Part shown: in pieces, positions 32,126 through 57,884 of the stretch
Layout: every line of letters begins with the position of its first letter
Numbering within the stretch: position 1 is the first letter of the stretch
Source of the DNA: Squalus acanthias
Taxonomy: Eukaryota
Direction of reading: 5' to 3'
DNA: 64,000 nucleotides
NCBI GenBank assembly: GCA_030390025.1
Contig: CM059449.1
Span: 13,640,001-13,704,000, forward strand
Notes under the pieces: model-generated
The model's input: the letters and a program-made list of their open reading frames with translations, nothing else
Told to the model about the DNA's origin: nothing
The model's database searches: none
Made by a program: the position numbers and the translations under genes

Positions 32126-32166
32126 CTGAATGGCAATTTGAACTCCGGCGATTTATACATATCTAT
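32126..32166 (-). CDS. Possible 41-nt cytoplasmic/stop-containing exon
   Basis: cctattttacag|ATAGATATGTATAA...ATTCAG|gtatgt, with good splice signals. Gives a stop within 1-4 codons when joined to either candidate TM donor. Confidence 0.45.
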
Positions 32167-35100
32167 CTGTAAAATAGGCAGCACAGATTAGGTTTTTGTT
32201 AGTTACGAGAAAAATCAACGTAATAAGCGATCGCTTCTTGCTATAGTTTTGATACTTGTGTGTTTACAGCGGCTTTCCTTCTCATGTCAACCCTCATGCA
32301 TGGCACGGGCCTGTCTCCAGTCTCTACCGGTAAAAAAAAGAATTGACTTGGGTGCGAATATCTTAGGACAAAAGGTTGTCGCAAGTCTTACTCTTTTACC
32401 AGCTGAAAGGTCGAATAATTTAAAGTGGGCGAACCGGGCTAGATGCAATTTTCCTTGCCCCAGCACAAATCGCAACTCCAGGTATCCTGACGCAAAACCG
32501 ATGGCCAATGCCCTGATAGGTCAGCGGGACTGGCGGTCCAGGGACCACTGTTCATGGCTTATTGGTTTGCATTAAGTCCTGGTAGCCGAATTACAGGACC
32601 TGCATTTGCAATTACTTTAATAAGACAGAATTCAATTTGTTAACAGTAAAATACTCCTAATATAAAGTTACACGAAATAGCAAGTAACCGTGAGCACAAT
32701 TTACGAAACGGTACAATTTACAATGATTTTCCATTTGTTTTGAATAATTAGAATAACCGAGCTTGCAGTTTTACTTCTTAATCAAACTGCAAATGGAAAC
32801 GGTCCCATATGCCAATTGGTTTAAATTTACACTTTGGAACCGGACACCTGCCTGTTAGTTCAACTTCCTCTCGCTCTGCGATGATTGCCATAGGAGAACC
32901 TCGAGACTCGCAGAAATGCACGAGAAAAATTGTTAATAAGATGAGCAGAACAAACACTGCAAGTTTCACTCCCAGTTCAAGCAGCTGCCAAGGCAGCGAT
33001 CTCCCGCGCTTTTCCGGATGGTCCCGATCTATGTAGAAACAAACAATCACTTTCAGCAATTACTTTTTTTATCACCCGTACACTCACCTTGTTCGGAGTA
33101 GATATCTAGTTAGGTACTAATGATTCCTATTGTTACTCCATCTAGTTTGACTTGATTCCTGGCGTCGACTTTCTCTATATTTCTCAATAAAGGCAGATGT
33201 GAAGTAACCATTTAAAGCCCGGCTATTTATTTGGCCCCAGGTTTTAGATTGCTAAACTCATTCGTTTTTCGGATGAGACGTTAATCTGAGGCCCCGTCTA
33301 CCCTCCCAGCTGCTCGTAAAATATTCCATGGCCACTATTCGAAAAAGAGCAGTGTCCCTGCCAATATTTATCCCTCAACCAACATCACTAAAACAGATGA
33401 TCTGGTCATTATCACATTGCTGTTTGTGGGAGCTTGCTGTCCGCAAATTGGCTGCCGCGTTTCCTACATCACAGCAGTGAATACCCTTAGAGCAGAGAAG
33501 GTTGAGAGCAGATTTGATAGAGGTGTTCAAAATCATGAGGGGTCTGGACAGAGTAGATAGAGAGAAACTGTACCCATTGGTAGAAGCGTCGAGAACCAGA
33601 GGACACAGATTTAAAGTGATTGGCAGAAGGTCCAAAGGCGACGTGAGGAAAACCTTTTTTACACAGCGAGTGGTTAGGATCTGGAATGCATTGGCTGAGA
33701 GGGTGGTGGAGGCAGATTCAATCGTGGCTTTCAAAAGGGAATTGGATAAGTACCTGAAGGAAAGAAATTACAGGACTACGGTGAAAGGGCGGGGGAGTGG
33801 GCCTAGCTGAAGTGCTCTTAAGAACATAGAACATAAGAAATAGGAGCAGGAATAGGCCACACGGCCCCTCGAGCCTGCTCCGCCATTCAGTAAGATCATG
33901 GCTGATCATCGACCTCAACTCCACTTTCCCGCCTGATATCCATATCCCTTGATTCCACTAAAGTCCAAAAATCTATCTAACTCGGCCTTGAATATACTCA
34001 AAGACTCAGCATTCACAGCCCTCTGGGGCAGATACTTCCAAAGATTCACAACCCTCTGAGTGAAGAAATTCTTACTCATCTTAGTCTTAAATGGCCTACC
34101 CCTTATCCTGAGACTATGCCCCCTAGTTCTAGACACGCCAGCCAGGGGAAACAACCTCTCAGCATCTACCCTGTCAATCCCCTTCAGAATCTTGTATGTT
34201 TCAATGAGATCACCTCTCATTCTTCTAAACTCCAGAGAGTATAGGCCTATCCTACACAATCTCTCATCATAGGACAGCCCTCTCATCCCAGGAATCAATC
34301 TGGTGAACCCCCGTTGCACCACCTCCAAGGCAAGTATATCCTTCCTTAGATAAGGAGACCAAAACTGTGCACAGTACTCCAGGTGTGGTCTCACCAAGGC
34401 CCTGTACAATTGTAGCAAGACTTCCTTACTCTTATACTCCATGTCCTTGCAATAAAGGCCAACATACCATTTGCCTTCCTTATTGCTTGCTGTACCTGCA
34501 TGCTAGCTTCCTGTGTTTCTTACACGAGGACACCCAGATCTCTCTGAACACCAACATTTGAAAGTTTCTCACCATTTAAAAAATATTCTGCTTTTCTATT
34601 GTTCCTACCAGAGTGAATAACCTCACATTTCCCTACATTATACTCCATCTGCCACATTACTGCCCACTCACTTAGTCTCTCTATATCCCTTTGCAGACTC
34701 TTTGTGTTCTCCTCAGGGCTTATTGTCCCACCTAGCTTTGTATCATCAGCAAACTTGGATACATTACACTCGGTCCCTTCATCTAGGTCATTAATATAGA
34801 TTGTAAATAGCTGAGGCCCCAACACTGATCCTTGCGGCACCCCACTAGTTACAGCCTGCCAACCTGAAAAAGATCCGTTTATCCCTACTCGCTGTTTTCT
34901 GTCCGTTAACCAATCCTCTATCCATGCTACCAAATTACCCCCAACCCCATGAGCCCAATCTTGTGTAATAACCTTTTATGTGGCACCTTATCGAATGCCT
35001 TTTGGAAATCCAAATATACCAAATCCACTGGTTCCCCTTTATCTACCCTGCTAGTTACTTCCTCAAAAAACTCTAATAAACTCTCATAAATTTGTCAAAC

Positions 35101-38100
35101 TCTTGCAGAGAGCAGGCACGGGCTCGACGGGCCGAATGGCCTCCTTCTGCGCTGTAACCATTCCATGATTCTATGATTCTATTTCAAAAGTATGTCGTTG
35201 GCTGCAAAGCGCTTTGGGACACCATGAGGTTGCAAAGCGCGCTATATCAATGCAAACTTTATTTTTTCAAGTAGATAAACAGATTCTTGCACCCATTATT
35301 TCCTCTCTCTATATATACATATCACTAAAGTGCTTTATTTGATACACACCAATCTTACTTCCAATATCTCTCTTTTGGCTTCTGCCATTATTGTTCTTGC
35401 ATTTCTCGACTTATAATGTAACCACCTCTTCTGTAACGCTTTTCTTGTATAGATTAACATTGAGCGATAGTTGCTTCTGGATGATAAATGAACATGTTCA
35501 GAGATATGGATAGCCATGGTTACCATTAGGCCATTAAGTGCAATCAAGATTATATATTATCTACCAAATATATGCTGGCAGTGGTGGAAGCTTGTTGGGC
35601 TAATGATTTTACATGCTGGTTGGCTGCCTGCTCTACTGAACACATGGAAGCTGCCTGTCTTGTGGCACTCTTAAGTTAGTCTTCATTCAATCATTGGAAC
35701 ATCCCACCGACAGTATATCCCTTTCAGTATCAGCTTAGAAACATCTGGAAATTATTTCATAAAAGACAAGCAGTTATCCATTGTATACTGTATTAATTTG
35801 AAGTATTTAATGCATTAGGCATTTTCTAATGTTAAAAGGAGATGGAATAATTTTGGTGGGCTTATTTCTTTCTTACTTTCCTNNNNNNNNNNNNNNNNNN
35901 NNNNNNNNNNNNNNNNNNNNNNNNNNNNNNNNNNNNNNNNNNNNNNNNNNNNNNNNNNNNNNNNNNNNNNNNNNNNNNNNNNNNNNNNNNNNNNNNNNNN
36001 NNNNNNNNNNNNNNNNNNNNNNNNNNNNNNNNNNNNNNNNNNNNNNNNNNNNNNNNNNNNNNNNNNNNNNNNNNNNNNNNNNNNNNNNNNNNNNNNNNNN
36101 NNNNNNNNNNNNNNACACTCTTAATCTCATTCCCCATATAACTTACGTTTAACTGTTAATATTGTTCCTGCTCCAGTGTCTTTCCCGACGAAGAATATCT
36201 CCACCTGACAGTAATATGTGCCTGAGTCATTGTGGTTCACGTTTGTGATCGCGATAGTAGCGTGTCGATTCGCTTTGAAGGATGATCTTTCCACCTCCAT
36301 AATTCTACCCGAGTATTTTGCGGATGTATTCGACACCCTGGACTCTTCTGTTCCATCTCTTACGTCTTTGTACCAAGAGAAGGCCCCCGTGTGTTGAACG
36401 TAAGATGTGTTGTAAGTGCAGAGCAGGTGGACGGTCTCTCCCTCGGTAGCCTCAATGGAAGGTGGTGTTTGAAACACGTTGACCTTTCTGGCAGCTGAAG
36501 CTGTAACATAAATGCCCAGGGCAGTTTATGTACAAAGTGAGATAGCTCTTCCACGTCTACAACAGCTGGGATAACACAATCATGTCAAACTAGGTTCTGT
36601 TTCACCATGTACTTCGAAGATACCCGTTACCAAACGCAGCGAACGTGTTGACAAAGCTATTTCGCTCCGTATAAGGACTACTCGTGTAGGTCATTTTAAC
36701 GTGAGTGGTACTGTAACCTAACGGCAAGAAGTAGTTTCAATTGATGTTGTAGGTCTAATTAATCTATAAATATGATCAACTTAGATCTCAATCATTCAAC
36801 AAATTAGAAGCAAAATCTGTCTACCATAAACAGTTACTTTATATGATGAATATTTTCTCAGCTGCACGCTATGCCATGATATACTTCTAACTACTCTGGT
36901 ATTATCCAGACCTGCATGGTTGTAGAAGTAAGGACCACAATCCGTTAATTGCTATCACATCGTGTGAGTTCAGTTCAAGATTGTAGTCTTTGTGATGGGC
37001 TATAGGACTGTGAATGCTTGCATCTCTATATGCACAGATTGACACAGAGGTGCGGTCGTCAGAGTTAGTACAGAAGCTCCAGCAAACACAGCTGACATAT
37101 AAAACTACTTAAGTACATAAGTACATAAGAAATAGGAGCAGGAGTCGGCCATACAGCCCCTCGAGCCTGCTCCGCCATTCAATAAGATCATGGCTGATCT
37201 TCCACCTCAACTCCACTTTCCTGCACTATCCCCATATCCCTTGATTCCCCTAGAGTCCAAAAAGCTATCGATCTCAGTCTTGAATATACTCAACGACTGA
37301 GCCTCCACAGCCGTCTGGCATAGAGAATTCCAAAGATTCACAACCCTGCGATTGAAGAAATTCCTCCTCATCTCAGTCCTAAATGGCCGACCCCTTATCC
37401 TGAGACTATGCCCCCTAGTTCTAGACACTCCAGCCAGGGGAAACAACCTCTCAGCATCTACCCTGTCAATCCCCTTCAGAATCCTGTATGTTTCAATGAG
37501 ATCACCTCTCATTCTTCTAAACTCCAGAGAGTATAGGCCCAATCTACACAATCTCTCATCATAGGTCAGCCCTCTCATCCCAGGAATCAATCTAGTGAAC
37601 CTCTGTTGCACCACCTCCAAGGCAAGTATATCCTTCCTTAGATAAGGAGACCAAAACTGTGCACAGTACTCCAGGTGTGGTCTCACCAAGGCCCTGTACA
37701 ATTGTAGCAAGACTTCCTTACTCTTATACTCCATGTCCTTGCAATAAAGGCCAACATACCATTTGCCTTCCTTATTGCTTGCTGTACCTGCATGCTAGCT
37801 TCCTGTGTTTCTTACACGAGGACACCCAGATCTCTCTGAACACCAACATTTGAAAGTTTCTCACCATTTAAAAAATATTCTGCTTTTCTATTGTTCCTAC
37901 CAGAGTGAATAACCTCACATTTCCCTACATTATACTCCATCTGCCACATTACTGCCCACTCACTTAGTCTCTCTATATCCCTTTGCAGACTCTTTGTGTT
38001 CTCCTCAGAGCTTATTGTCCCACCTAGCTTTGTATCATCAGCAAACTTGGATACATTACACTCGGTCCATTCATCTAGGTCATTAATATAGATTGTAAAT

Positions 38101-41100
38101 AGCTGAGGCCCCAACACTGATCTTTGCGGCACCCCACTAGTTACAGCCTGCCAACCTGAAAAAGATCCGTTTATCCCTACTATCTGTTTTCTGTCCGTTA
38201 ACCAATCCTCTATCCATGCTACCAAATTACCCCCAACCCCATGAGCCCAATCTTGTGTAATAACCTTTTATGTGGCACCTTATCGAATGCCTTTTGGAAA
38301 TCCAAATATACTACGTCCACTGGTTCCCCTTTATCTACCCTGCTAGTTACTTCCTCAAAAACTCTAATAAACTCGATGGGCTCGACGGGCCGAATGGCAT
38401 CCTTCTGCGCTGTAACCATTCCATGATTCTATGATTCTATTTCAAAAGTATTTCGTTGGCTGCAAAGCACTTTGGGACACCATGAGGTTGCAAAGCGCGC
38501 TATATTAATGCAAAACTTTATTTTTTCAAGTAGATAAACAGATTCTTGCACCCATTATTTCCTCTCTCTATATATACATATCACTAAAGTGCTTTATTTG
38601 ATACACACCAATCTTACTTCCAATATCTCTCTTTTGGCTTCTGCCATTATTGTTCTTGCATTTCTCGACTTATAATGTAACCACCTCTTCTGTAACGCTT
38701 TTCTTGTATAGATTAACATTGAGCGATAGCTGCTTCTGGATGATAAATGAACATGTTCAGAGATATGGATAGCCATGGTTACCATTAGGCCATTAAGTGC
38801 AATCAAGATTATATATTATCTACCAAATATATGCTGACAGTGGTGGAAGCTTGTTGGGCTGATGATTTTACATGCTGGTTGGCTGCCTGCTCTACTGAAC
38901 ACATGGAAGCTGCCTGTCTTGTGGCACTCTTAAGTTAGTCTTCATTCAATCATTGGAACATCCCACCGACAGTATATCCCTTTCAGTATCAGCTTAGAAA
39001 CATCTGGAAATTATTTCATAAAACACAAGCAGTTATCCACTGTATAATGTATTAATTTGAAGTATTTAATGCATTAGGCATTTTCTAATGTTAAAAGGAG
39101 ATGGAGTAACTATGGTGGGCTTATTTCTTTCTNNNNNNNNNNNNNNNNNNNNNNNNNNNNNNNNNNNNNNNNNNNNNNNNNNNNNNNNNNNNNNNNNNNN
39201 NNNNNNNNNNNNNNNNNNNNNNNNNNNNNNNNNNNNNNNNNNNNNNNNNNNNNNNNNNNNNNNNNNNNNNNNNNNNNNNTTATTCTCCATATAAACTTAC
39301 GTTTAACTGTTAATATTGTTCCTGCTCCAGTGTCTTTCCCGACGAAGAATATCTCCACCTGACAGTAATATGTGCCTGAGTCATTGTGGTTCACGTTTGT
39401 GATCGCGATAGTAGCGTTTCGATTCGCTTTGAAGGATGATCTTTCCACGTCCATAATTCTACCCGAGTATTTTGCGGATGTATTCGACACCCTGTACTCT
39501 TCTCCTCCATCTCTTACGTCTTTGTACCAAGAGAAGGCCCCCGTGTGTTGAACGCCAGATGTGTTGTAAGTGCAGCGCAGGTGGACTGTCTCTCCCTCGG
39601 TAGCCTCAATGAAAGGTGGTGTTTGAAACACGTTGACCTTGCTGGCAGCTGCCGCTGTAACATAAATGCCCAGGGAAGTTTATGTACAAAGAGAGATAGC
39701 TCTTCCACGTCTACAACAGCTGCGATAACACAATCATGTCAAACTAGGTTCTGTTTCACCATATACTTCGAAGAATCCCGTTATCAAACGCAGCTAACGC
39801 GTTGACAAAGCTATTTCGCTCCGTATAAGGACTACTCGTGTAGGTCATGTTAACGTGAGTGATACTGTAACCTAACGGCAAGAAGTAGTTTCAATTGATG
39901 TTCTAGGTCTAATTAATCTATAAATATGATCAACTTAGATCTCAATCATTCAACAAATTAGAAGCAAAATCTGTCTACCATAAACAGTTACTTCATATGA
40001 TGAATATTTTCATTATATACTTTCATTCTGCCAGCATTTCACACTTCACACTTCTGAGCCATCTTTTGTTTCTTAACCTGTCCTATTACCATCTCGTCTT
40101 GCCTTGAGCATCTCTTAATGTCTCTACTTATCATAGACCACCCCTTTTGTTCTTTAATTCCTCCCCCCAGCCTCCCACTTGCTTTTTTATCTGTTTCATT
40201 TCCTGCTTTTTTCTCAGTTCTGACGAAAGGTCTTCGACCTGAAACGTTAAATCTATTTCTTTCTCCACGGATGTTGCCTGGCCTGCTGAGTATTTCCAGC
40301 GTTTTTTGTTGTTGTTTCACTTTTCCAGCATCTGCAGTATTTTGCGATCGTACTTCATATGATGAATATTTTCTCAGCTGCACGCTATGCCATGATATAC
40401 TTCTAACTACTCTGGTATTATCCAGACCTGCACGATTGTAGAAGTAAGGACCACAATCCGTTAATTGCTATCACATCGTGTGAGTTCAGTTCAAGATTGT
40501 AGTCTTTGTGATGGGCTATAGGACTGTGAATGCTTGCATCTCTATATGCACAGATAGACACAGAGGTGCGGCCGTCAGAGTTAGTACAGAAGCTCCAGTA
40601 AACACAGCTGACATATAAAACTACTTAAGTACATAAGTACATAAGAAATAGGAGCAGGAGTAGGCCATACAGCCCCTCGAGCCTGCTCCGCCATTCAATA
40701 AGATCATGGCTGATCTTCCACCTCAACTCCACTTTCCTGCACTATCCCCATATCACTTGATTCCCCTAGAGTCCAAAAAGCTATCGATCTCAGTCTTGAA
40801 TATACTCAACGACTGAGCCTCCACAGCCCTCTGGGATAGAGAATTCCATGATTCACAACCATGCCATTGAAGAAATTACTCCTCATCTCAGTCCTAAATG
40901 GGCGACCCCTTATCCTGAGACTATGCCCCCTAGTTCCAGACTCTCCAGCCAGGGGAATCAGCCTCTCAGCATCTACCCTGTCAACCCTCTCAGAATCTTA
41001 TATGTTTCAATGAGATCACCTCTCATTAATCTAAACTCCAGAGTGTATTGGCCCATTCTACTCAATCTCGCCTCATAGGAGAAGACTCTCATCCCAGGAA

Positions 41101-43164
41101 TCAATATAATGAGCCTTCGTTGCACCCTCTCTGGGGCAAGTATATCGTTAGGTACGGAAACTTAAACTGTGCACAGTACTCCAGGTGTGGTCTCACCAAA
41201 GCCCTGTACAATTGCAGCAAGACTTCCTCACACTTGTACTCCAACCCCTTGCAATAAAGGCCAACATACCAGTTGCCTTCCTAATTGTTTGCTGTACCTG
41301 CATGTTAACTTTCTGTATTTTGTGTACAAGAGCACCCAAATCTCTCTGAACACCAATATTTAACAGTTCTTCACCATTTAAAAAACACTTCAGAAAAAAA
41401 ACACTGGTTCCATTAAACTAAACCCGAATAGACTCATGGCCCAAACACAGAAAGGTCCCCAAATGTATTTGGTAGTCTTGCTCCTTGAAACAATGGACCA
41501 TATAAACTTCACATTAACTTAAAGATAGGCTGCACTAGACAGGGAGCCAATGTTGAATAAACTTACGTTTCACGGTTAGTATTGTGCCCGGCCCAGTTTC
41601 TGTTCCAACGTCGAACATTTCGACTTGGCAGTAGTATGTTCCTGAATCTGCCAGTCTGGTCGTGCTGATGGTAATGGACGCGTCTTTGTTTTCTCTGAAG
41701 GAATGTCTATCGGTCATAGCAATTCGGCCGAGGAAATCTCTTGAATTGTTAGAAACCATACAGGTTTCGTTCTTGCATTTCTTATACCACCTGAATGCAC
41801 CATTAGTTTCCCTTTCTGTAGCAATGTAAGTACAGGGTAAGTGTGCTCTCTCTCTTTCGAAGACATCAATTGAAGGGGTCTGAATGATTATGATGCTAGC
41901 AGAGTGGGCTCCTGTCAAACAAATGTCTAATTAGCAACTTCAAACTACCTCTTTCATATGGGACATCAGCATCATGCCTTCGTCTTACTTTTATCCCATT
42001 TCCTCTCATGCTAATAATACTGCGTTCCGCCAGTGCGTGGAAATAAAACATTATTGTAGAATTGTATCATTCTCAACAAGTAAAAAGGACATTGGCCGCG
42101 ATTTCCCCTACACTCGGCGGGTCCGGTGCGGCTGGGGTCGGTGGCGGCTCCAGCCCGCTCTGTGAAATGATTTTACCTGGATAGGGCTTGTTAAGCCCCG
42201 CCCAGCGGGTTTCCAGGCCAATTGAAGGAAACGGGTCTGATGACGTCATTTGATGACGCGACAGCAGCCGGTTTCCTTAAAGGGACCATGCGCAAATTGA
42301 TTTTGACAGTTGTGCTAAGAACATAAGAACATAAGAAATAGGAGCAGGAGTAGGCCATACAACCCATCGAGCCTGCTCCGCCATTCAATAAGATCATGGC
42401 TGATCATTCATCTCAACTCCACTTTCCTGCACTATCCCCATATCCCTCGATTCCCCTAGAGTCCAAAAATCTATCGATCTCAGGCTTGAATATACTCAGA
42501 GACTCAGTATCCACAGCCATCTGGGGCAGAAAATTCCAAAGATTCACAACCCTCTGAGTGCATAAAATCCTCCTCATCTCGGTCTTAAATGGCCGACCCC
42601 TTATCCTGAGACTATGCCCCCTAATTCTAGACACTCCAGCCAGGGGAAACAACCTCTCAGCATCTACCCTGTCAATTCCCTTCAGAATCTTGTATGTTTC
42701 AGTAAGATCACCTCTCATTCTTCTAAACTCCAGAGAGTATAGGCCCATTCTACGCAATCTCTCATCATAGGACAGCCCTCTCATCCCAGGAATCAATCTA
42801 GTGAACCTTTGTTGCACCACCTCCAAGGCAAGTATGTCCTTCCTTAGATAAGGAGACCAAAACTGTGCACAGTACTCCAGGTGTGGTCTCACCAAGGCCC
42901 TGTACAATTGTAGCAAGACTTCCTTACTCTTATATTTCAACCCCCATGCAATATAAGCCAACATGCCAGCTGCCTTCCTTATTGCTTGCTGTACCTGCAT
43001 GCTAGCTTTCTGTGTTTCTTGCACGAGGACACCCAAATCTCTCTGAACACCAACATTTCAAAGTTTCTCACCATTTAAAAAAATTCCTAAATCTGTTTCT
43101 TACTCTGTTGGGGAAGGTCGGAGGCAAAGGAAACAATAATAACATACAACATAATTAGTAACAT
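32126..43164 (-). CDS. NCR3: Multi-exon gene model: NKp30/NCR3-like Ig-superfamily receptor with three VJ-type V domains (leader 43164-43104; V1 41911-41567; V2 39654-39301; V3 36500-36147; possible micro-exon 33105-33088; TM from 33028; possible tail exon 32166-32126)
   Basis: The leader, V1, V2, V3 and TM exons are in order on one strand, joined by compatible phase-1 GT-AG introns, with no stops. The V domains resemble human NKp30 as I recall it (Q-P-P start, EG..L.C, W.K/R, GR, D.G.Y.C.VE, G.GT.L.V), and the TM has a basic residue. The symbol indicates family resemblance, not proven orthology. Confidence 0.72.
32848..33028 (-). CDS. NCR3: Stalk/transmembrane exon (DRDHPEKRGRSLPWQLLELGVKLAVFVLLILLTIFLVHFCESRG...)
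   Basis: Acceptor ttgtttgtttctacatag| in phase 1, followed by a ~22-aa hydrophobic stretch containing Lys. The 3' end is uncertain: GT donor after 32848, GC donor after 32852, or read-through to the stop at 32778. Confidence 0.72.
33088..33105 (-). CDS. Possible 18-nt stalk micro-exon (x-IYSEQ-)
   Basis: ctag|ATATCTACTCCGAACAAG|gtgagt. Strong donor, phase 1-1, 59 nt upstream of the TM exon acceptor. The polypyrimidine tract is weak. Confidence 0.35.
33262..33815 (+). mobile_element. DeuSINE fragment followed by a CR1 3' fragment
   Basis: Deu domain at 33262-33480, then RADLIEVFK...FFTQRVVRIWN at 33485-33815. Confidence 0.8.
33820..35100 (-). mobile_element. CR1 LINE fragment (left boundary of the V-exon duplication)
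   Basis: ORFs 33915-34442 and 34520-34933 encode the CR1 RT and C-terminus. Confidence 0.92.
35883..36114. other. Assembly gap (232 N)
   Basis: Run of N. Confidence 1.
36147..36500 (-). CDS. NCR3: Ig V-set (VJ-type) exon 3, NKp30-like; recent duplicate of exon 2
   Basis: Acceptor atgttacag| and donor |gtaagt, 354 nt, phase 1-1. About 12 nt differences from exon 2 by hand count. Confidence 0.9.
37110..38420 (-). mobile_element. Chimeric CR1 at the duplication junction
   Basis: The 3' part matches the copy at 40628 and the 5' part matches the copy at 33820. Confidence 0.88.
39133..39279. other. Assembly gap (147 N)
   Basis: Run of N. Confidence 1.
39301..39654 (-). CDS. NCR3: Ig V-set (VJ-type) exon 2, NKp30-like
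   Basis: Acceptor atgttacag| and donor |gtaagt, 354 nt, phase 1-1. Encodes VFQTPPFIEATEGETVHLRCTY...FSWYK...YSGRI...DSGTYYCQVEIFFVGKDTGAGTILTVK. Confidence 0.9.
40012..40350 (+). mobile_element. Short Penelope-like UTR insertion with 23-bp TSD and hammerhead motif (40216-40252)
   Basis: tacttcatatgatgaatattttc is duplicated at 39989-40011 and 40351-40373. The paralogous empty site is at 36835-36857. Confidence 0.85.
40628..41385 (-). mobile_element. CR1 LINE 3' fragment
   Basis: CR1 tail and C-terminal coding remnant. Confidence 0.88.
41567..41911 (-). CDS. NCR3: Ig V-set (VJ-type) exon 1, NKp30-like
   Basis: Acceptor tttgtttgacag| and donor |gtaagt, 345 nt, phase 1-1. Encodes AHSASIIIIQTPSIDVFERERAHLPCTY...FRWYK...FLGRI...LADSGTYYCQVEMFDVGTETGPGTILTVK, with canonical Cys, Trp, DxxxYYC and GxGT motifs. 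Confidence 0.9.
42318..43085 (-). mobile_element. CR1 LINE 3' fragment in the leader-V1 intron
   Basis: ORF 42413-43036 encodes the CR1 C-terminus, with an (aagaacat)n tail. Confidence 0.9.
43104..43164 (-). CDS. NCR3: Leader (signal peptide) exon MLLIMLYVIIVSFASDLPQQ
   Basis: ATG at 43164, 20 codons plus 1 nt, hydrophobic core, then donor A|GTAAGA (phase 1). Joins V1 in frame to read ...QQRAHSASIIIIQTP. Confidence 0.7.
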
Positions 43165-44217: not shown

Positions 44218-47200
44218 GCGTCAGCCGTGGCTCGGTGGTAGCACTCTCGCCTATGAGTCAGAAGGTTGTGGGCTGTGGAAAGTCCCACTCCAGAGATTGG
44301 AGCACAAAATCTAGGACGACACTCAAGTGCAGTGCTGAGAGACAACATTCTCTCTAATTTTTATTTTAGGTGCGTGGTCCCTTTACATTTGCTGTGCGGC
44401 TGCGCAACAGCTAGTGAGCGGCCCGCGCGGGTCACCCCCGATCGCTGCTGAGCAGGGCAGTTTAAAGAGAACATTGCGGATCGAGCGCCGCACTGTCAGA
44501 TGTGCCGCCGATCGGATGAGATGCTAAACCGAGGCCCCATCTGTCCTCTCAGGTGGACGTAAAAGATCCCATGGCACTATTTCGAAGAAGAGCTGGGGTG
44601 TTTCCGGCACTATTTGAAGAAGAGCAGCGGAGTTTCCAACACTATTCGAAGAAGAGCAGAGGAGTTTCCGGCACTATTCGAAGAAGAGCAGGGAAGTTTC
44701 CGGCACTATTCGAAGAAGAGCAGGGAAGTTTCCGGCACTATTCGAAGAAGAGCAGGGGCGTTTCCGGCACTATTCGAAGAAGAGCAGCGGAGTTTCCGGC
44801 ACTATTCGAAGAAGAGCAGCGGAGTTTCCGGCACTATTCGAAGAAGAGCAGGGGCGTTTCCGGCACTATTCGAAGAAGAGCAGCGGAGTTTCCGGCACTA
44901 TTCGAAGAAGAGCAGCGGCGTTTCCGGCACTATTCGAAGAAGAGCAGCGGAGTTTCCGGCACTATTCGAAGAAGAGCAGCGGAGTTTCCGGCACTATTCG
45001 AAGAAGAGCAGCGGAGTTTCCGGCACTATTCGAAGAAGAGCAGGGGAGTTTCCGGCACTATTCGATGAAGAGCTGCGGAGTTTTCGGCACTATTCGAAGA
45101 AGAGCAGGGGAGTTTCCGGCACTATTCGAAGAAGAGCAGGGGAGTTTCTGGCACTATTCGAAGAAGAGCAGCGGAGTTTCCGGCACTATTCGAAGAAGAG
45201 CAGGGGAGTTTCCGGCACCATTCGAAGAAGAGTAGGGGAGTTTCCGGCACTATTCGAAGAAGAGCAGGGGAGTTTCCGGCACTATTCGAAGAAGAGCAGC
45301 GGAGTTTCCGGCACTATTCAAAGAAGAGCAGCGGAGTTTCCGGCACTATTCGAAGAAGAGCAGCGGAGTTTCCGGCACTATTCGAAGAAGAGCAGGGGAG
45401 TTTCCGGCACTATTCGAAGAAGAGCAGGCGAGTTTCCGGCACTATTCAAAGAAGAGTAGGGGAGTTTCCGGCACTATTCGAAGAAGAGCTGGGGAGTTTC
45501 CAGCACTATTCGAAGAAGAGCTGGGGAGTTTCCTGCACTATTCAAAGAGGAGCGGGGGAGTTTCCAGCACTATTCGAAGAAGAGCAGGGGAGTTTCCTGC
45601 ACTATTCGAAGAAGAGCTGGGGAGTTTCCAGCACTATTCGAAGAAGAGCAGGCGAGTTTCCGGCACTATTCAAAGAAGAGTAGGGGAGTTTCCGGCACTA
45701 TTCGAAGAAGAGCTGGGGAGTTTCCAGCACTATTCGAAGAAGAGCTGGGGAGTTTCCTGCACTATTCGAAGAGGAGCGGGGGAGTTTCCAGCACTATTCG
45801 AAGAAGAGCAGGGGAGTTTCCAGCACTATTCGAAGAAGAGCAGGGGAGTTTCCAGCACTATTCGAAGAAGAGTAGGGGAGTTTCCGGCACTATTCGAAGA
45901 AGAGCAGGGGAGTTTCCGGCACTATTCGAAGAAGAGCAGCGGAGTTTCCGGCACTATTCAAAGAAGAGCAGCGGAGTTTCCGGCACTATTCGAAGAAGAG
46001 CAGCGGAGTTTCCGGCACTATTCGAAGAAGAGCAGGGGAGTTTCCGGCACTATTCGAAGAAGAGCAGGCGAGTTTCCGGCACTATTCAAAGAAGAGTAGG
46101 GGAGTTTCCGGCACTATTCGAAGAAGAGCTGGGGAGTTTCCAGCACTATTCGAAGAAGAGCTGGGGAGTTTCCTGCACTATTCAAAGAGGAGCGGGGGAG
46201 TTTCCAGCACTATTCGAAGAAGAGCAGGGGAGTTTCCTGCACTATTCGAAGAAGAGCTGGGGAGTTTCCAGCACTATTCGAAGAAGAGCAGGCGAGTTTC
46301 CGGCACTATTCAAAGAAGAGTAGGGGAGTTTCCGGCACTATTCGAAGAAGAGCTGGGGAGTTTCCAGCACTATTCGAAGAAGAGCTGGGGAGTTTCCTGC
46401 ACTATTCGAAGAGGAGCGGGGGAGTTTCCAGCACTATTCGAAGAAGAGCAGGGGAGTTTCCAGCACTATTCGAAGAAGAGCAGGGGAGTTTCCAGCACTA
46501 TTCGAAGAAGAGCAGGGGAGTTTCCGGCACTATTCGAAGAAGAGCTGGGGAGTTTCCAGCACTATTCGAAGAAGAGTAGGAGAGTTTCCGGCACTATTCG
46601 AAGAAGAGCAGCGGAGTTTCTGGCACTATTCGAAGAAGAGCTGGGGAGTTTCCAGCACTATTCGAAGAAGAGCTGGGGAGTTTCCAGCACTATTCGAAGA
46701 AGAGCTGGGGAGTTTCCGGCACTATTCGAAGAAGAGCAGCGGAGTTTCCGGCACTATTCGAAGAAGAGCAGCGGAGTTTCCGGCACTATTCGAAGAAGAG
46801 CTGGGGAGTTTCCAGCACTATTCGAAGAGGAGCAGGGGAGTTTCCAGCACTGTTCAAAGAAGAGCTGGGGAGTTTCTGGCACTATTCGAAGAAGAGCAGG
46901 GGAGTCTCCGGCACTATTCGAAGAAGAGCTGTGGAGTTTCCGGCACTATTCGAAGAAGAGCTGTGGCATTTCCGGCACTATTCGAAGAAGAGCAGGGGAA
47001 TTTCCAGCACTATTCGAAGAAGAGCAGGGGAGTTATCCCAGTGTCTTGGCCAATATTTATCCCTCAACCAGCATCACTAAAACAGATTATCTGGTCATTA
47101 TCACATTGCTGTTTGTGGGAGCTTGCTGTGTGCAAAGTGGCTGCCCGTTTCCTACATTACAACAGTGACTGCGCTTCAAAAAGTACTTCATTGGCTGTAA

Positions 47201-48883: not shown

Positions 48884-50279
48884 ATTATGTCCACACTCCA
48901 TCGATAATTTGCTGGCGGGATTTCCTAATCTGTCGCCGTAATCGGCGACAAATCATCGGAAGGCCCGGATAACGCATAAACGAGGCTTCCGCCGAACTTC
49001 CGCCAAAGTTAGGGTGGGCGTTCGGGATAACAAACCTCATCCCAGGGACCTATGCTGGACTTGGGGATGGACCCAATGGGCCAAAGAACAGTGTGCCTTC
49101 TCAGCGGACGACCCAGTGACCTTACCTTTAAATTAAAAAAAAAATGACAAGCGAAACAACGCAATAAGTCGAATAAATGTAATAAAAACATACAACTGAA
49201 CCAGCTGACAGAATTAAATTACAAGTAAGAACATTTTCCAGACTACACAACAGCGAAGAGTAGTAAGGAAAGAAATAGCTTACTAAGAAGTAGCATCAAT
49301 CTCCACAGCAGGTCAGCGGGATTCATTGCTTCACAGTGACCTAGGAATCAAAACAATTACTGATAGTCCCTTCGTTTTAATTCTACAGAAGGCAAAGTAC
49401 AGGTCTTACATGATAACACTCCCTACAGTCCCCTAATAATTCCTCACCTTATCTGCTGTGATCTCTTAAGGTGTGACTATATGCACATTAAAACCCGCCC
49501 ATTAAGATAGTCACATTACCAATTCTAAAGGTTTTATTTATGCATACTTTAAACATTCATTTGTTCCTGCACTTCTGCCATTGGAAAGGAGAGCGAAAAA
49601 TACCTAAAGAAACATTTCAATGAGCAAGGAAAATCAGACACAGAAGTAAGTTAAGGATGTCATTAACTTGTTTTTTTTTCTGAGAAATATTTCCTTCTTC
49701 AGGCAGCAGCTGAAATAAACCATTTTATCACCACAACCGATTAGGCCCTCCCGTAATACATAAAACGGCATCCACTCGTTGAGCTGTGAACTATCCAGGG
49801 AATTACTCACAATGAAAAGGAGCTCATGCTGTTTCAGGAAGGAGTGCTTGGATAAGCAAGTAGGGAAGGTGAGCACAAGGACTTTCCAGTGTAAGAATGT
49901 GGAAAGCAGTCTCCAATAGACCACTCCAGAGATAGGGAAGTAATTAGTTTGATTTGTTCTTAGAACATTAACAATGCTTTACTCAGTTACTTTAGACAGA
50001 TTCATAAATGCCACCTCTCCATAAATGGGGCGCAGCTATTTCCTGTTCATGTGTTTAGCGCGTGTGTTTTTTATAGCCAAACTGAAGAAATATATTGCTG
50101 CATCTTTTTCATATTTCTACCTGTCCTTTGCCATTTTTCCAATATTATCTAATAAGAGTTGGGCCGGAAATCAGGATGAGTTCAGTAGCTGAATGCTCTG
50201 ACGGACAGGATTTGAGAATAGTTTGTATGAAGAGAGTGGAAAAGAATGTTAACGAACGGGCCTGGTGCTAGGTACTCTG

Positions 50280-50660
50280 CTAGGCTGACACTCCCATTGC
50301 AGTGCTGAGGGGCGCTGCACTGTCGGAGGTGCCGTCTTTCGGATGAGACGTTAAACCAAGACCCCTTCTGCTCTCACAGGTGGATGTAAAAGATCCCGCG
50401 GCACTATTTCGAAGAAGAGAAGGGGAGTTATTCTTGGTGTCCTGGGCCAATATTTATCCCTGAACCAACATAACAAAAACAAATATTATCTGGTCTTTAT
50501 CGCATTGCTGTTTGTGGGAGCTTGCTGTGCGCAAATTGGCTGCCGCGTTTCCCACATTACAATAATGACTGCACTCCAAAAGTACTTCATTGGCTGTAAA
50601 GCGCTTTGAGACGTCCGGTGGTCGTGAAAGACGCTATATAAATGGAAGTCTTTCTTTCTT
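50280..50660 (+). mobile_element. DeuSINE, 5'-truncated (a second partial copy lies at 50815-51120)
   Basis: Deu domain and tail. Confidence 0.85.
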
Positions 50661-52357
50661 TCTGGTATTGGAAAGGCAGTGTGAGGCGTGAATAGAGCTA
50701 CTTGTGAGATATATCAGGAAGATATAAGAGCGATAAAGACCGTGTCTGGCAGGTGTGGTTACACATGCAAAAGAACAACGAACAGAGATTGATTGTATTG
50801 TGCAGGCATCACCTGTCTTTCGGATGCGATGTTAAACCGAGGCCCCGTCTGCCCTCTCAGGTGGACGTTAAAGATCCTACAGCACTACTTCGAAGAAGAG
50901 CAGGGGAGTTCTCCTCGGTGTCCCGGGCTAATGTTTATCCCTCAATCAACATCACTAAAAAAAAAAAGATTATCTGGTTATTATCACATTGCTATTTGTG
51001 GGAGCTTGCTGTCACGTTTCTTACATTACAACAGTGACTGCATTTCAAAAATACTTGGTTGGCTGTAAAGCGCTTTGGGACGTCCTGAGATCATGAAAGG
51101 CTCTATGTAAATACACGTCTTTTGTGGTGACATCATAGGTAGAAAGTATTCTTTAGAGGTAAGTAGGATGCACAAATGTAATGATGTGACGTTAGGGAAA
51201 TGTAATTAAACCTATAAAGTTATAGTACAGCTAGGTTCCTGAGGGGCTTCTACCTAGTCTTGCTTAGGCTCAAGTGAGCAGCCAAGACGACACGCTATGA
51301 CACCCGATGAGTCCAGTACACGTGAGTAACTTTCGGTACCAGTCTCATGGGCATTGCATGTAATGGGTTGCATTAATGCTTTGGCGACTAAAGAATATTA
51401 ATCAGGCGTGTCAGTATTTCCTCTTCCTCGAACTTGTATCAACGGTAAGGATAAAGGACTATCCTGCAAAGCCAAAAAGGGCAACGAGTGAATCGGACTG
51501 AGCTACAGCAGTTAGGTTGGCAGAGTGGGCCTGCAAAGGTTATGGAGCAGATGGAAGGCGCTGCGCCGAATCATTGGAGCAGGTCCAGAGGGGAAGATAT
51601 GCCCGACAAAATTGACAAACTACCCGGTGATAGACTAAGAGCAGCGGGGGTGGGTGTAGCAAAGGATGGGACAGGCTAGAGAAATCTGAAGGTTGCATGT
51701 GTTGTATGAGAGAGTGAGGAGAATGGATGATTTAAGCAGACGAGGAATGAGAGTTAAAGCAATCAAAAATACAGATGGACAGCTATTGAGTGGGTCAATT
51801 GAATTAAGAAGGAGATGGCAGGAACTGTATGCCAAAGAGAAAAAGCCGGCTGACATTGAAATAGGAAAGGTGAAGGATGTGTAATTTGATTTTATGGGCC
51901 TGGAAAGCTTGCGTCGGAAGTGAGGGTTGCAATAAGTGATCTTAAGAATGGAAAGGCCTCAGGCATTGATGACATTTCAACATGATTAGTTAATAACATG
52001 GGAGCGGTGGCAACAAACAATCTCGCTTATTTATGTAAAACCATGTATTTGAAAGGGGGTGGTCAAATAATTTCCTGAAATCGACCATGATACCTCTGGA
52101 AAGAAAATTGGTACAACCAGTTTGATTTCACGGGCCTCAAAGATTATGGTCATATGACTAAGATTAACAGAAAAAGCGGAACAACATCTCGGCAAAGATC
52201 CATTTAGGTTTTTCAGAAGATGTGGCGCAAGAAAGGCAATAAGGGTACTGAGAGTTCCAAGTGAGAGGAGAATAGAACACAATCACAAGGGGCACATTTG
52301 TTTTCTAGTTTTCGAAAAAGCCTTTTATAGAATGAACTGTATCAAACTAATGGAGGT

Positions 52358-55300
52358 ACATAGAAACATAGAAAAATAGGAGCAGGAGTAGGCCATTCGG
52401 CCCTTCGAGCCTGTTCCGCCATTCAATATGATCATGGCTGATCCCCTATCTCAATATCATATTCCCGCTCTCTCCCCATACCTCTTGATGCCTTTTGTGT
52501 CTAGAAATCTATCTATCTCCTTCTTAAATATATTCAGTGACTTGGCCTCCACAGTCATCTGTGGTAGAGAATTCCACAGGTTCACCACCCTCTGATTGAA
52601 GAAATTTCTCCTCATCTTAGTCCTAAATGTCCTACCCCGTATCCTGAGACGGTAACCCTTCGTTCTAGAACCACCAGCCAGGGGAAACATCCTCCCTGAA
52701 TCCAGTCTGTTTAGCCCTGTCAGAATTGTACACGTTTCAATGAGATTCCCTCTCATTCTTCTAAACTCTAGTGAATACAGACCTAGTCGACCCAATCTCT
52801 CCTCATACGACAGTCCTGCCATCCCAGGAATCAGTCTGGTGAACCTTTGCTGCACTCTGTCTATGGCAAGTATATCCTTTCTTAGGTAAGGAGACCAAAA
52901 TTGCACACAGTACTCCAGGTGTGGTCTCACCAAGGCCCTACATAAGAACATAAGAACATAAGAAATAGGAGCAGGAGTAGGCCAATCGGCCCCTCGAGCC
53001 TGCTCCGCCATTCAATAAGATCATGGCTGATCTGATCCTAACCGACAATCTACTATCTATCACAGAACCATCTCCTGCATCTAACAGAATTGCACACACG
53101 AAATAGGAGCAGAATCAGGCTACACGGTCCCTGGGCCCGCTCCACTACCCACAGGGCCATGACCGATCCGAACCTAGACTCATGTCCAAATTCCTGCCCG
53201 CTCCCCGTAACCCTTAATGCCCTTTACTTCTAGGAAACTGTCTATTTCTGTTTTAAATTTAATTAATGTTGTAGCTTCTACAGCTTTTTGTGGCAGCATA
53301 TTCCATGGACCTACCACCCTCTGAGTGAAGTAGTTCCTCCTCATCTCAGTTTTGAAAGAGCAGCCCCTTATTCTAAGACTATGTCCCCTAGTTCTAGTCT
53401 CACCTGTCATCGGGAACATCCTCCCCGCATCCACCCGATCCAACCCCTTCACAATCTTATATGTTTCAATAAGATCGCCTCTCATTCTTCTGAACTCCAA
53501 TGAGTAGAGTCCCAATCTACCCAACCTCTCCTCATATGACCACCCCCTCATCCCCGGGATTAACCGAGTGAACCTTTTTTGCACTGCCTCGAGAGCAAGG
53601 ATGTCTTTCCTTAAGTAAGGACACCAAAACTGTATGCAGTATTCCAGGTGCGGTCTCACCAATACCTTGTACAATTGAAGCAATACCTCCCTATTTTTAT
53701 ATTCTATCCCCCTAGCAATGAAAGCCAACATTCCATTTGCCTTCTTAATCACTTGCTGCACCTGCATACTAACCTTTTGAGTTTCGTGCACCAGGACCCC
53801 CAGATCCCTTTGCACTTCAGTACTCTCCAGTTTCTTGCCATTAAGATAATAAATTGCTCTAGGATTTTTCCTGCCAAAGTGCATCACCTCACACTTTCCA
53901 GTGTTGTATTCCATCTGCCAAATCTCTGCCCACTTACTTAGCCTGTCTATGTCCCCTTGCAGGTTTTTTATGTCCTCCTCACTCACTACTTTCCCTCCCA
54001 TCTTTGTATCATCTGCAAATTTTGATATGTTACACTTGGTCCCTTCCTCCAAATCGTTAATATAGATTGTAAAGAGTTGGGGACCCAGCACTGACCCCTG
54101 TGGAACACCACTAGTTACTGATTGCCAGTCTGAGAATGAACCATTTATCCCAACTCTTTGCTTTCTGTTGGATAGCCAATCCTCTATCCATGCCAGAATA
54201 TTACCCCCAATCCCGTGATTTTTTACCTTAAGCAATAATCTTTTGTGTGGCACCTTGTCAAATGCCTTTTGGAAGTCGAAGTACACTACGTCCACTGGTT
54301 CCCCTTTATCCACTCTATATGTTACTTCCTCAAAGAACTCCAGCAAATTTGTCAAACATGACTTCCCCTTCGTAAAACCATGCTGACTTTGTCCTATTAA
54401 ATTATGATTATCCAAATGTCCTGTTACTGTTTCCTTAATAATGGACTCCAAAATTTTACCTACCACAGATGTTAGGCTAACCGGTCTATAGTTACCAGCC
54501 TTCTGTCTACTGCCCTTTTTAAATAAGGGTGTTACATTAGCAGTTTTCCAGTCTGCCGGGACCTCAGCGGAATCCAGGGAGTTTTGAAAAATTATTACCA
54601 ATGCATCTACAATCCCTACCGCCACTTCCTTCAAGACTCTAGGATGTAAGCCATCAGGTCCAGGTGATTTATCCGCCTTGAGTCCCATTATGCCCTGTAC
54701 AACTGTAGTAAGACATTCTTGCTCCTGTACTCAAATCCTCTTGCAATGAAGGCCAACATACCATTTGCCTTCCTAACTGTTTGCTGCACCTGCATGTTTG
54801 CTCTCAGTGACTGGTGTACAAGGGCACCCAGGTGCCGTTGTACATCAGCAGTTCCCAATCTAGCACCATTTAAATAATACTCTACCTTTCTGTTTTTCCT
54901 ACCGAAGTGGATAACTTCACATTTATCCACGTTATACTGCATCTGCCACGTATTTGCCCACTCACTCAACTTGTCTAAATCGCCTTGAAGCCTCTTTGCA
55001 TCCTCCTCACAACTCACAATCCCACCTAGTTTCGTGTCGTCAGCAAACTTGGAAATATTACACTTGGTTCCCTCATCCAAAACATTGATATATATTGTGA
55101 ATAGCTGGGACCCAAGCACTGATCCCTGTGGTACCCCACTAGTCACCGCCTGCCACCCCAAAAAAGACCCTTTTATTCCTACTCTCTGTTTCCTGTCTGT
55201 TAACTAATTTTCAATCCATGCCAGTATATTACTCCCAATCCCATGTGATTTAATTTCGCACACTAACCTCTTATGTGAGGCTTTATCAAGGCCATCTGAA

Positions 55301-57860: not shown

Positions 57861-57884
57861 TTCACTGCTTCAATTATGTCCTAT

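What the first reader, a model, noticed from the sequence alone, without database searches (positions are those of the whole stretch)
32126..43164. Three-V-domain NKp30-like receptor gene hidden among repeats
Seen: one leader exon, three VJ-type V exons and one TM exon, all on the minus strand and all joined in phase 1. I found no second leader or TM exon between the V exons. Known: mammalian NKp30 (NCR3) has a single germline-joined VJ domain encoded by one exon, binds B7-H6, and has homologues in cartilaginous fish. Inference: this locus encodes a multi-domain NKp30-like receptor (L-V-V-V-TM-short tail), an architecture I do not know to be described. It is the best candidate for a novel system in this window.
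Basis: partly seen in the sequence, partly recalled or inferred. Interest (0 to 1): 0.85.

Follow-up and report, generated by a model that had tools for sequence, protein, structure and literature searches.

The report
Shark NKp30-family receptor with three V exons
This is a real immune-receptor gene of the NKp30 (NCR3) family from a shark-like genome; an old two-domain version gained a third, nearly identical domain through a recent exon duplication, which makes it an interesting variant of a known family rather than a new system.

Summary
The three minus-strand V exons (41911-41567, 39654-39301, 36500-36147) and the TM exon (from 33028) are real, intact and in phase 1. All three are V-set domains with a J-like end. 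Their best single-domain solved relative is human NKp30, and their nearest named relative is nurse-shark NCR3. The conserved leader lies at 49326-49284, and a short tail exon lies at 32166-32153. Both N gaps are intronic, just 3' of the V2 and V3 donors.

RefSeq models from Pristiophorus japonicus and Heterodontus francisci are exon-by-exon orthologues with two V domains (L-V1-V2-TM with Lys-short tail). Here the second V exon was duplicated by unequal crossover between two CR1 LINEs, and a chimeric CR1 marks the event.

Contigs of two RNA-like runs cover V1 and V3 exactly at the predicted exon borders. Depth arithmetic fits a V1>V2>V3 chain, but this is indirect: the joints table was swamped by repeats.

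Multi-V NKp30-like models (2-6 V) exist in other sharks, rays, lungfish and frogs, so the architecture is not unique.

First-stage notes list two other NKp30-like genes elsewhere in this genome; I did not check them.

The parts
49284..49326 (-). Leader exon, coding part: ATG at 49326, 14 codons plus 1 nt, donor GTAAGC, phase 1.
   Evidence: It is the only strong match in the whole window, on either strand, to the leaders of P0151 (11/13 identical), P0154 (10/13) and P0006. It was not tested with reads because it lies outside the stretch laid.
44573..47034 (.). 32-bp minisatellite, about 77 copies, inside intron 1.
   Evidence: Tandem Repeats Finder; the repeat finder family D1.
41567..41911 (-). 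V1 exon (VJ-type V domain, membrane-distal), phase 1-1.
   Evidence: Pfam V-set E 3.7e-14. 92/114 identical to domain 1 of the Pristiophorus orthologue. It forms a clade with both orthologues' D1, support 100/99. RNA-like contigs of X1 (507 nt) and X2 (478 nt) lie on exactly 41567-41911, with further letters on both sides.
40626..41385 (-). CR1 LINE fragment 'a' in the V1-V2 intron, one partner of the unequal crossover.
39301..39654 (-). V2 exon (VJ-type V domain), the upstream copy of the duplicated exon, phase 1-1.
   Evidence: Pfam V-set E 2.4e-17. 108/117 aa identical to V3. 12 of 351 in-frame nt differ, 11 nonsynonymous steps to 1 synonymous. Inclusion after V1 is inferred from X1 depth arithmetic.
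39133..39279 (.). Assembly gap (N) in the intron, beginning 21 nt 3' of the V2 donor. Not filled.
37110..38420 (-). Chimeric CR1 LINE between V2 and V3. The part from 37121 to about 37420 matches CR1 'a'; from about 37421 upward it matches CR1 'b'. The crossover point is near 37400-37430.
   Evidence: Over 37121-37420 the match is 290/300 to 'a' against 260/300 to 'b'. Over 37421-37899 it is 470/479 to 'b' against 388/479 to 'a' (windows). The upper limit of 38420 comes from the RT ORFs and is approximate.
36147..36500 (-). V3 exon (VJ-type V domain), the downstream copy of the duplicated exon, phase 1-1.
   Evidence: Pfam V-set E 3.9e-18. 96/114 identical to domain 2 of the Pristiophorus orthologue. 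RNA-like contigs lie at 36147-36457 (X1) and 36147-36497 (X2) and end at the donor border; the upstream intron bins have depth 0.
35883..36114 (.). Assembly gap (N) in the intron, beginning 32 nt 3' of the V3 donor. Not filled.
33817..35240 (-). CR1 LINE 'b' in the V3-TM intron, the other partner of the crossover. The upper limit is approximate.
32852..33028 (-). Stalk, TM and start-of-tail exon, with a Lys inside the TM helix. The 3' end is uncertain: phase 1 at 32852 needs a GC donor, while a GT donor at 32847 would give phase 2.
   Evidence: 43/57 identical to P0151 and 40/56 to P0154. One place in the window. Sequence read. The V>TM junction is inferred from orthologues only.
32153..32166 (-). 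Last coding exon: 2 nt plus 3 codons plus TAA, after a TTTTACAG acceptor.
   Evidence: It is the only hit of three degenerate patterns modelled on the orthologues' C-termini. It gives a four-residue end like that of P0151 when read in phase 1. Not tested with reads.

Best explanation
The locus is one gene of the shark NCR3 (NKp30) family, on the minus strand from at least 49326 to about 32150.

Its exons are a leader, three germline-joined VJ-type V exons, one stalk/TM exon with a Lys in the membrane helix, and a tiny tail exon. The short ITIM-free tail and the TM Lys mark it as an activating-type receptor. By inference from mammalian NKp30 and similar receptors, it would signal through an adaptor with an acidic TM residue.

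The ancestral gene had two V domains, a divergent distal V1 and an NCR3-like proximal V. That form is kept in Pristiophorus and Heterodontus. In this lineage, unequal crossover between two same-strand CR1 LINEs in the flanking introns duplicated the proximal V exon in frame.

The mRNA most likely carries all three V exons (L-V1-V2-V3-TM).

Shown here: the exons, the family, the orthology, the duplication mechanism and transcription of V1 and V3. Inferred: inclusion of V2 together with V3, the adaptor, the ligand, and the exact 3' end.
For: V-set domains with a J-like end. NKp30 is the best single-domain PDB match.

Exon-by-exon identity to P0151: leader 11/13, V1 92/114, V2 91/113, V3 96/114, TM 43/57. 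Identity to P0154 is similar (sequences).

Tree: V1 groups with the orthologues' D1 (100/99). V2+V3 are sisters (97/81) inside the orthologues' D2 clade (96/92), next to nurse-shark NCR3 (91/83).

The chimeric CR1 shows a clean switch near 37420. The duplicated units differ by 60/2653 non-coding substitutions.

RNA-like runs X1 and X2: V1 contigs have exact exon borders and run on 73 and 33 nt without a branch. V3 contigs end at the donor. The intron bins 36505-37089 have depth 0.

Depth arithmetic. In X1, a 73-nt tail of the V1 contig placed on the V2 start predicts 2.91 and 2.03, against 2.9 and 2.02 observed. A second contig of depth 12.2, with 30 nt on the V2 end and 73 nt on the V3 start, predicts 1.88 and 20.35, against 1.88 and 20.4 observed. 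In X2, two contigs (49.5 and 30.8) end on the V3 start.
Against: The V1>V2 and V2>V3 joints were not listed in the joints table; 872 joints, mostly CR1 noise, were not shown. The chain therefore rests on depth arithmetic and on how a de Bruijn graph would break.

In X2 both V1-side tails appear to lie on V3, and the V2 5' half has depth 0. That fits the chain only if V2 and V3 are alike over nt 4-33 in that sample.

X1 and X2 are labelled 'RNA?' by a guess and come from coded organisms A and B, which may not be the window's individual.

Both orthologues have two V domains. V2 carries most of the derived amino-acid changes, which could mean relaxed constraint on a poorly used exon.

The leader>V1, V3>TM and TM>tail junctions were not tested with reads. 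The phase-1 TM donor would be GC, which is rare.

The deep tree inside the NCR3-like group is an unresolved polytomy that also holds a bovine 'SIRP-beta-1-like' model.
Confidence: 0.6

Rival explanations
1. The gene makes two-V receptors like its orthologues. V2 and V3 are used alternatively, or V2 is mostly skipped, so that the third V exon is a redundant or decaying duplicate.
For: Both orthologue models have two V domains. At the 9 residues where V2 and V3 differ, V3 keeps the orthologues' state at about 5-6 and V2 at 1 (my reading). Nonsynonymous divergence (11/270) is about at or above the non-coding rate (60/2653; Fisher P 0.058). In X2 the V2 5' half has depth 0.
Against: The V1 contigs of X1 and X2 run 73 and 33 nt into the next exon without branching, although V2 and V3 already differ at exon nt 2-3. 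V1 therefore has one successor. In X1 that successor fits V2, and a second contig fits V2-end>V3-start. V2 has intact Cys/Trp/YYC/J motifs and the same splice signals as V3. Contigs drop rare or bubble variants, so absence of V2-specific contigs is weak evidence.
Confidence: 0.22
2. V2 and V3 are one exon falsely duplicated by the assembler, for example two haplotypes placed in tandem around gaps.
For: N gaps sit at the same homologous position in both units, and the units are 96-98% alike.
Against: The junction is a chimeric CR1 with a clean switch between two parents that are only about 85% alike, as expected of a real unequal crossover. The copies differ by 2-4% plus indels. In X1, V2-type and V3-type 5' ends both occur, and V1 does not branch as it would for two alleles.
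Confidence: 0.05
3. The V exons belong to another V-set receptor family (pIgR-like, SIRP-like or CD300-like), as the RefSeq names of the orthologues suggest, and not to the NKp30 family.
For: RefSeq calls the orthologues 'polymeric immunoglobulin receptor-like' and 'signal-regulatory protein beta-2-like'. SIRP-alpha V domains follow closely in the PDB list for V1 (8e-8 against 2e-10). The deep branches are unresolved.
Against: NKp30 leads among single-domain PDB chains for V1 and V2. The nearest curated name is nurse-shark NCR3, which shares the same TM with Lys. The turtle pIgR-like domains are split off with 100/99 support. No C1-type exon follows the V exons in the orthologues. The tail is short, unlike pIgR.
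Confidence: 0.08

Closest known systems
Pristiophorus japonicus 'polymeric immunoglobulin receptor-like' isoforms X1/X2 (P0151, 310 aa; P0001, 251 aa) and Heterodontus francisci 'signal-regulatory protein beta-2-like' X2 (P0154, 307 aa)
   Same: Exon-by-exon orthologues. They share the leader, a divergent distal V, an NCR3-like proximal V, the stalk/TM with Lys and the very short tail (75-84% identity per exon to P0151). The X2 isoform lacks the TM exon, which suggests a possible soluble form here too.
   Different: They have two V domains; the window has three V exons because the proximal one is duplicated.
Nurse shark NCR3 (QTT61904, P0006; from the set deposited with Kinlein et al. 2021, a paper recalled and cited but not read)
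   Same: VJ-type V domain 66/114 identical to V2 and V3. A similar leader, and the same TM motif with Lys. It is sister to the proximal-V clade in the tree (91/83).
   Different: The deposited protein has a single V domain and no counterpart of V1.
Mammalian NKp30 / NCR3 (PDB 3NOI, 3PV6, 6YJP, 9FWW)
   Same: One-exon germline-joined VJ V domain with the same C-terminal pattern (Cys, charged strand F, G-x-G-T-x-L-x-V). A basic residue in the TM and a short tail. Best single-domain solved match.
   Different: It has a single V domain and Arg rather than Lys in the TM (recalled). Identity is only about 30-35%. Ligand (B7-H6) binding is untested here.
Other multi-V NKp30-like gene models: Heterodontus 3-V (P0003), Mobula 5-V (P0002), Scyliorhinus and Chiloscyllium 2-V (P0005, P0011), Bombina 3-V (P0009), Protopterus 6-V (P0022)
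   Same: Tandem VJ-type V domains in one predicted chain.
   Different: These are paralogous lineages, several with long tails and no TM Lys. Some models look like fusions of neighbouring genes (P0008 and P0004 have internal TM- or leader-like stretches).

Membership tests
NCR3 / NKp30 family | V domain encoded by one exon with the J segment already joined (J-like G-x-G-T-x-L-x-V end) | tested here: met
   All 3 exons end in the J-like motif, with the donor directly after it.
NCR3 / NKp30 family | Sequence closer to NCR3 than to other V-set families | tested here: met
   NKp30 chains are the best single-domain PDB matches (V1 E 2.1e-10, V2 8e-13). Nurse-shark NCR3 is the nearest curated name. 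The margin over SIRP and CEACAM is modest, and the deep tree is unresolved.
NCR3 / NKp30 family | Basic residue in the TM helix and a short tail without ITIM (activating type) | tested here: met
   A Lys lies in the TM, conserved in P0151, P0154, P0006, P0155 and P0123. The tail is about 25 residues. That mammalian NKp30 has Arg is recalled.
NCR3 / NKp30 family | Single V ectodomain (mammalian and nurse-shark QTT61904 architecture) | tested here: not met
   There are three V exons here and two V domains in the orthologues.
NCR3 / NKp30 family | Linkage to the MHC or to B7H6 | not testable with these tools
   No other gene was recognised in the 64-kb window.
NCR3 / NKp30 family | Binds a B7H6-type ligand | not testable with these tools
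   This needs a binding assay.
Polymeric Ig receptor (the RefSeq name of the orthologue) | V-like domains without a J motif, a long cytoplasmic tail with sorting signals, and no charged TM residue (recalled definition) | tested here: not met
   A J motif is present, the TM has a Lys and the tail is short. Turtle pIgR-like domains are split off with 100/99 support.
SIRP family (the RefSeq name of the orthologue) | One V domain followed by two C1-set domains (recalled definition) | tested here: not met
   In the orthologues the second V is followed directly by the TM exon residues. No other Ig-like ORF lies between V3 and the TM exon.

The most novel reading that the evidence does not exclude
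This species expresses a three-VJ-domain activating NKp30-family receptor. It was made by a recent CR1-mediated in-frame exon duplication on top of an ancient two-V NCR3 lineage shared by squalomorph and galeomorph sharks. The duplicated domains are diverging almost only at replacement sites. Multi-V NCR3 receptors would then be an old branch of the NKp30 family, mislabelled in databases and possibly undescribed, in which domain number is still evolving.
Probability: 0.5. Interest if true: 0.55.

Novelty: new variant of a known kind. Interest (0 to 1): 0.4.

Why it matters
NKp30 is the one NK receptor traceable from sharks to humans, and it is used as a model of the non-rearranging VJ domain that preceded antigen receptors.

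This locus shows that sharks carry a conserved two-V activating form of it. It also shows, with the recombination scar still readable in a chimeric LINE, that this form can gain a further V domain. That bears on how germline VJ receptors diversify by changing domain number as well as sequence.

It also corrects database names: pIgR-like, SIRP-beta-like and turtle-like for what are NCR3-family genes.

It is not a new system. The family, the domain type and multi-V gene models are already public.

Tried and rejected
Rejected: it has no similarity to any relative's leader, it lies next to a CR1 end, and a conserved leader exists at 49326.

Mini-exon or alternative acceptor at 33105. Rejected: the orthologues run from the V end straight into the residues encoded from 33028.

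Haplotype or assembly duplication. Judged unlikely.

Hidden exons in the gaps. No support from the orthologues, and the gaps were not filled.

Searching V1 alone in the 5.8-billion collection gave nothing, because relatives are longer than 1.75 times the query. This blank means nothing.

Read laying design was poor on my side. I included the CR1 copies and set likeness to 90. As a result the joints, loose-ends and pieces tables were filled by repeat noise (872 joints, 5176 loose ends and 343601 pieces not shown), and the exon-exon joints were not displayed. I replaced them with depth arithmetic, which is indirect.

The X2 bin 39235-39429 (10.6) is not explained by a single piece. A two-piece fit works but is not compelling.

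dN/dS: 11 nonsynonymous steps to 1 synonymous. This is not significant against synonymous sites (P 0.19) and is borderline against the non-coding rate (P 0.058).

Literature. Kinlein 2021 (PMC8273117), Flajnik 2012 (PMC3709836) and Ohta and Flajnik 2015 (PMC4594805) are not held. Searches found no paper in the held library that describes a multi-V NKp30. That does not show it is not in print. Supplements were not consulted.

No structure prediction was run.
Full report
WHAT IS THERE

On the minus strand the window holds three open, intact V-type exons at 41911-41567 (V1), 39654-39301 (V2) and 36500-36147 (V3). Each follows a pyrimidine-rich tract and AG. Each ends in a J-like motif followed at once by GTAAGT, and each is in phase 1 at both ends.

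All three score as Pfam V-set domains, with E 3.7e-14, 2.4e-17 and 3.9e-18. tblastn of the three translations against the whole window finds these three places and nothing else below E 0.7.

An exon starting at 33028 encodes a short stalk, a TM helix with a Lys in it, and the start of a short tail. It has one place in the window and no Pfam family.

THE GAPS

The window has two N runs, 35883-36114 and 39133-39279. They start 32 nt and 21 nt downstream of the donors of V3 and V2. They therefore lie in introns and touch no exon or reading frame.

Both lie at the same homologous position of two duplicated units, whose flanks align in register on both sides. I did not fill them. Contigs of related species that run into one of them were noted by length only.

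In both orthologues (below), each V is followed directly by the residues of the next exon seen here. Nothing therefore suggests an exon hidden in the gaps.

FAMILY

Against all PDB chains, human NKp30 (3NOI, 9FWW, 6YJP, 3PV6) is the best match of V1 (E 2.1e-10; SIRP-alpha next among single domains at 8e-8). For V2 it is the best single-domain match (E 8e-13).

Against 1.84 billion representatives, V3 has 605 hits at E<=1e-3, 104 at <=1e-10 and 9 at <=1e-30. Named ones among those I looked up (30 of 150) include:
- nurse-shark NCR3 (QTT61904; 66/114 identical to V3);
- NCR3-like proteins of a stingray, sturgeons and a lungfish;
- NCR3 of donkey and possum.

The nurse-shark, bamboo-shark and stingray proteins share the TM motif with the Lys.

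In a maximum-likelihood tree of 52 domains, all of these are separated from turtle 'pIgR-like' domains with 100/99 support. The inside of the group is a polytomy, and it also holds a bovine 'SIRP-beta-1-like' model. The family call therefore rests on nearest relatives and the TM more than on deep topology.

ORTHOLOGUES AND THE TRUE GENE MODEL

The best hit is a Pristiophorus japonicus RefSeq model in two forms: P0151 (310 aa) and the isoform P0001 (251 aa), which lacks the TM exon. A second orthologue is Heterodontus francisci P0154, 307 aa. Both read leader, V1-type domain, V2/3-type domain, TM with Lys, and a tail a few residues long.

Compared exon by exon, with no joined model made, the window matches P0151 at V1 92/114, V2 91/113, V3 96/114 and TM 43/57.

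Their leader has one clear counterpart in the window, on either strand. It lies at 49326-49284: ATG, 14 codons plus one base, donor GTAAGC, phase 1. It is 11/13 identical, with score 56 against 34 or less for anything else.

I reject it.

The orthologues' C-terminus has one counterpart at 32166-32153, after a TTTTACAG acceptor. Read in phase 1 it gives a four-residue end like that of P0151. This requires the TM exon to end at 32852 with a GC donor. A GT donor five bases on would give phase 2 and an earlier stop. This end is unresolved.

Intron 1 is about 7.4 kb and holds a 32-bp minisatellite of 77 copies.

THE THIRD V EXON IS A RECENT DUPLICATE

V2 and V3 are 108/117 identical. In the tree they are sisters (97/81) inside the clade of the orthologues' second domain (96/92), while V1 groups with the orthologues' first domain (100/99). 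The duplication therefore postdates the split from the Pristiophorus lineage.

The two units (about 33817-37134 and 37108-40650) are colinear.

The CR1 LINE between V2 and V3 is chimeric. From 37121 to about 37420 it matches the CR1 of the V1-V2 intron (290/300, against 260/300 to the other). From about 37421 upward it matches the CR1 of the V3-TM intron (470/479, against 388/479). That is the scar of an unequal crossover between two same-strand CR1 copies. It confirms a first-stage note on this window (s1-889084) and argues against an assembly artefact.

Non-coding parts of the units differ by 60/2653 substitutions. The exons differ at 12/351 in-frame bases, 11 nonsynonymous steps to 1 synonymous. 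This is suggestive but not significant: P 0.058 against non-coding sites and 0.19 against synonymous sites.

At the nine differing residues, V3 mostly keeps the orthologues' state and V2 mostly does not (my reading).

IS IT ONE THREE-V TRANSCRIPT?

One search for runs gave no run on record as RNA. I laid X1, X2 ('RNA?' by a guess; organisms A and B) and X19, X20 on 36115-41950.

X19 and X20 cover introns with 5-7% differences, so they are DNA of relatives.

X1 and X2 have depth 0 in the unique intron bins 36505-37089 but carry these contigs:
- Contigs that lie on exactly 41567-41911: 507 nt with 89 and 73 further letters, and 478 nt with 100 and 33 further letters.
- Contigs on 36147-36457 and 36147-36497 that stop at the V3 donor.

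These runs therefore behave as RNA. The borders of V1 and the donor of V3 are used.

The joints table did not show the exon joints, because CR1 noise filled it. This was my choice of stretch and of likeness 90.

Depth arithmetic on the printed tables gives the following for X1:
- The 73-nt tail of the V1 contig (depth 13.2) placed on the first 73 nt of V2 predicts bin means 2.91 and 2.03. Observed: 2.9 and 2.02.
- A second contig of depth 12.2, with 30 nt on the V2 3' end and 73 nt on the V3 5' end, predicts 1.88 and 20.35. Observed: 1.88 and 20.4.
- The body contig begins one base after a V2/V3 difference and has depth 20.8, as expected if V2 and V3 collapse there.

In X2 the V3 start carries two extra contigs (169.7 - 89.4 - 49.5 = 30.8). 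The body contig starts 30 nt, one k-mer overlap, before the end of the V1 contig's tail.

In neither run does the V1 contig branch at its 3' end, although V2 and V3 differ from exon base 2. V1 therefore has a single successor.

Together this fits V1>V2>V3. It remains an inference. X2 needs an extra assumption, and one of its bins is not explained by a single piece. I put 0.6 on the full reading, 0.22 on a mainly two-V product and 0.05 on an assembly artefact.

HOW IT LIKELY WORKS

A type I membrane receptor with three tandem VJ domains, a 12-residue stalk, a TM Lys and a tail of about 25 residues without an ITIM.

By analogy with NKp30 and other receptors that carry a basic TM residue (established knowledge, recalled), it would pair with an adaptor that has an acidic TM residue and carries ITAMs, and would activate the cell.

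The Pristiophorus isoform without the TM exon suggests a soluble form is possible here too, since V3 to the tail exon stays in frame.

The ligand is unknown; a B7H6-like molecule is the obvious guess.

First-stage notes report ITIM-bearing NKp30-like genes 67 kb before and 269 kb after this window (unchecked). If they hold up, this would be a cluster of paired activating and inhibitory receptors.

NOVELTY

The family is known in sharks. Kinlein et al. 2021 is cited; I recall its abstract only, and the paper is not held.

Multi-V relatives are already public as automated models. 38 of the 70 best hits printed hold two or more full V matches. Those I could name include horn shark (3 V), devil ray (5 V), catshark and bamboo shark (2 V), lungfish (6 V), paddlefish, bichir and frogs. 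Some of these belong to other families, and some look like fused neighbouring genes (P0004, P0008).

I found no paper in the held library that describes a multi-V NKp30. The key papers and all supplements were out of reach, so I do not claim it is not in print.

The new element here is the lineage-specific third V exon with its readable crossover scar. This is a new variant of a known kind, of moderate interest.

LIMITS

- No other gene was recognised in the window, which is mostly CR1 and other repeats.
- The species is not identified.

Noticed in passing
window 44573-47034: A 32-bp minisatellite of about 77 copies with 93% matches, inside what is now intron 1 of the gene. It produces long spurious ORFs on the plus strand.
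   Followed up: partly
window 40011-40351: A block of about 340 bp is present upstream of V2 but absent at the equivalent place upstream of V3. It is covered at depths of 1e5-1e6 in all four runs, so it is a high-copy, SINE-like repeat. Either it was inserted after the duplication or it was lost from the other unit.
   Followed up: partly
window 32846-32852: The TM exon can keep the orthologues' phase-1 junction to the tail exon only through a GC donor. The nearest GT donor gives phase 2 and an earlier stop. This could be a real GC-AG intron or a changed C-terminus in this species.
   Followed up: no
window 36115-41950, runs X19 and X20: DNA contigs of two other coded organisms cover V1, V3 and their introns with 5-7% differences. 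Related species therefore share this locus. Whether they carry the duplication could not be told.
   Followed up: no
same genome, 67 kb before and 269 kb beyond the window (first-stage notes s1-888266, s1-890660): Notes report other NKp30/NCR3-like genes with ITIMs. If right, this gene sits in a cluster of activating and inhibitory family members.
   Followed up: no
window 1-32000 and 49400-64000: The rest of the window shows only LINE (CR1-like reverse transcriptase and endonuclease) and other repeat-derived ORFs. No second cellular gene was recognised.
   Followed up: partly
proteins P0001/P0151, P0154, P0003, P0002 (RefSeq): NCR3-family multi-V genes of sharks and rays are named 'polymeric immunoglobulin receptor-like', 'signal-regulatory protein beta-2-like' and 'protein turtle homolog B-like' by automatic annotation. 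These names are misleading.
   Followed up: partly
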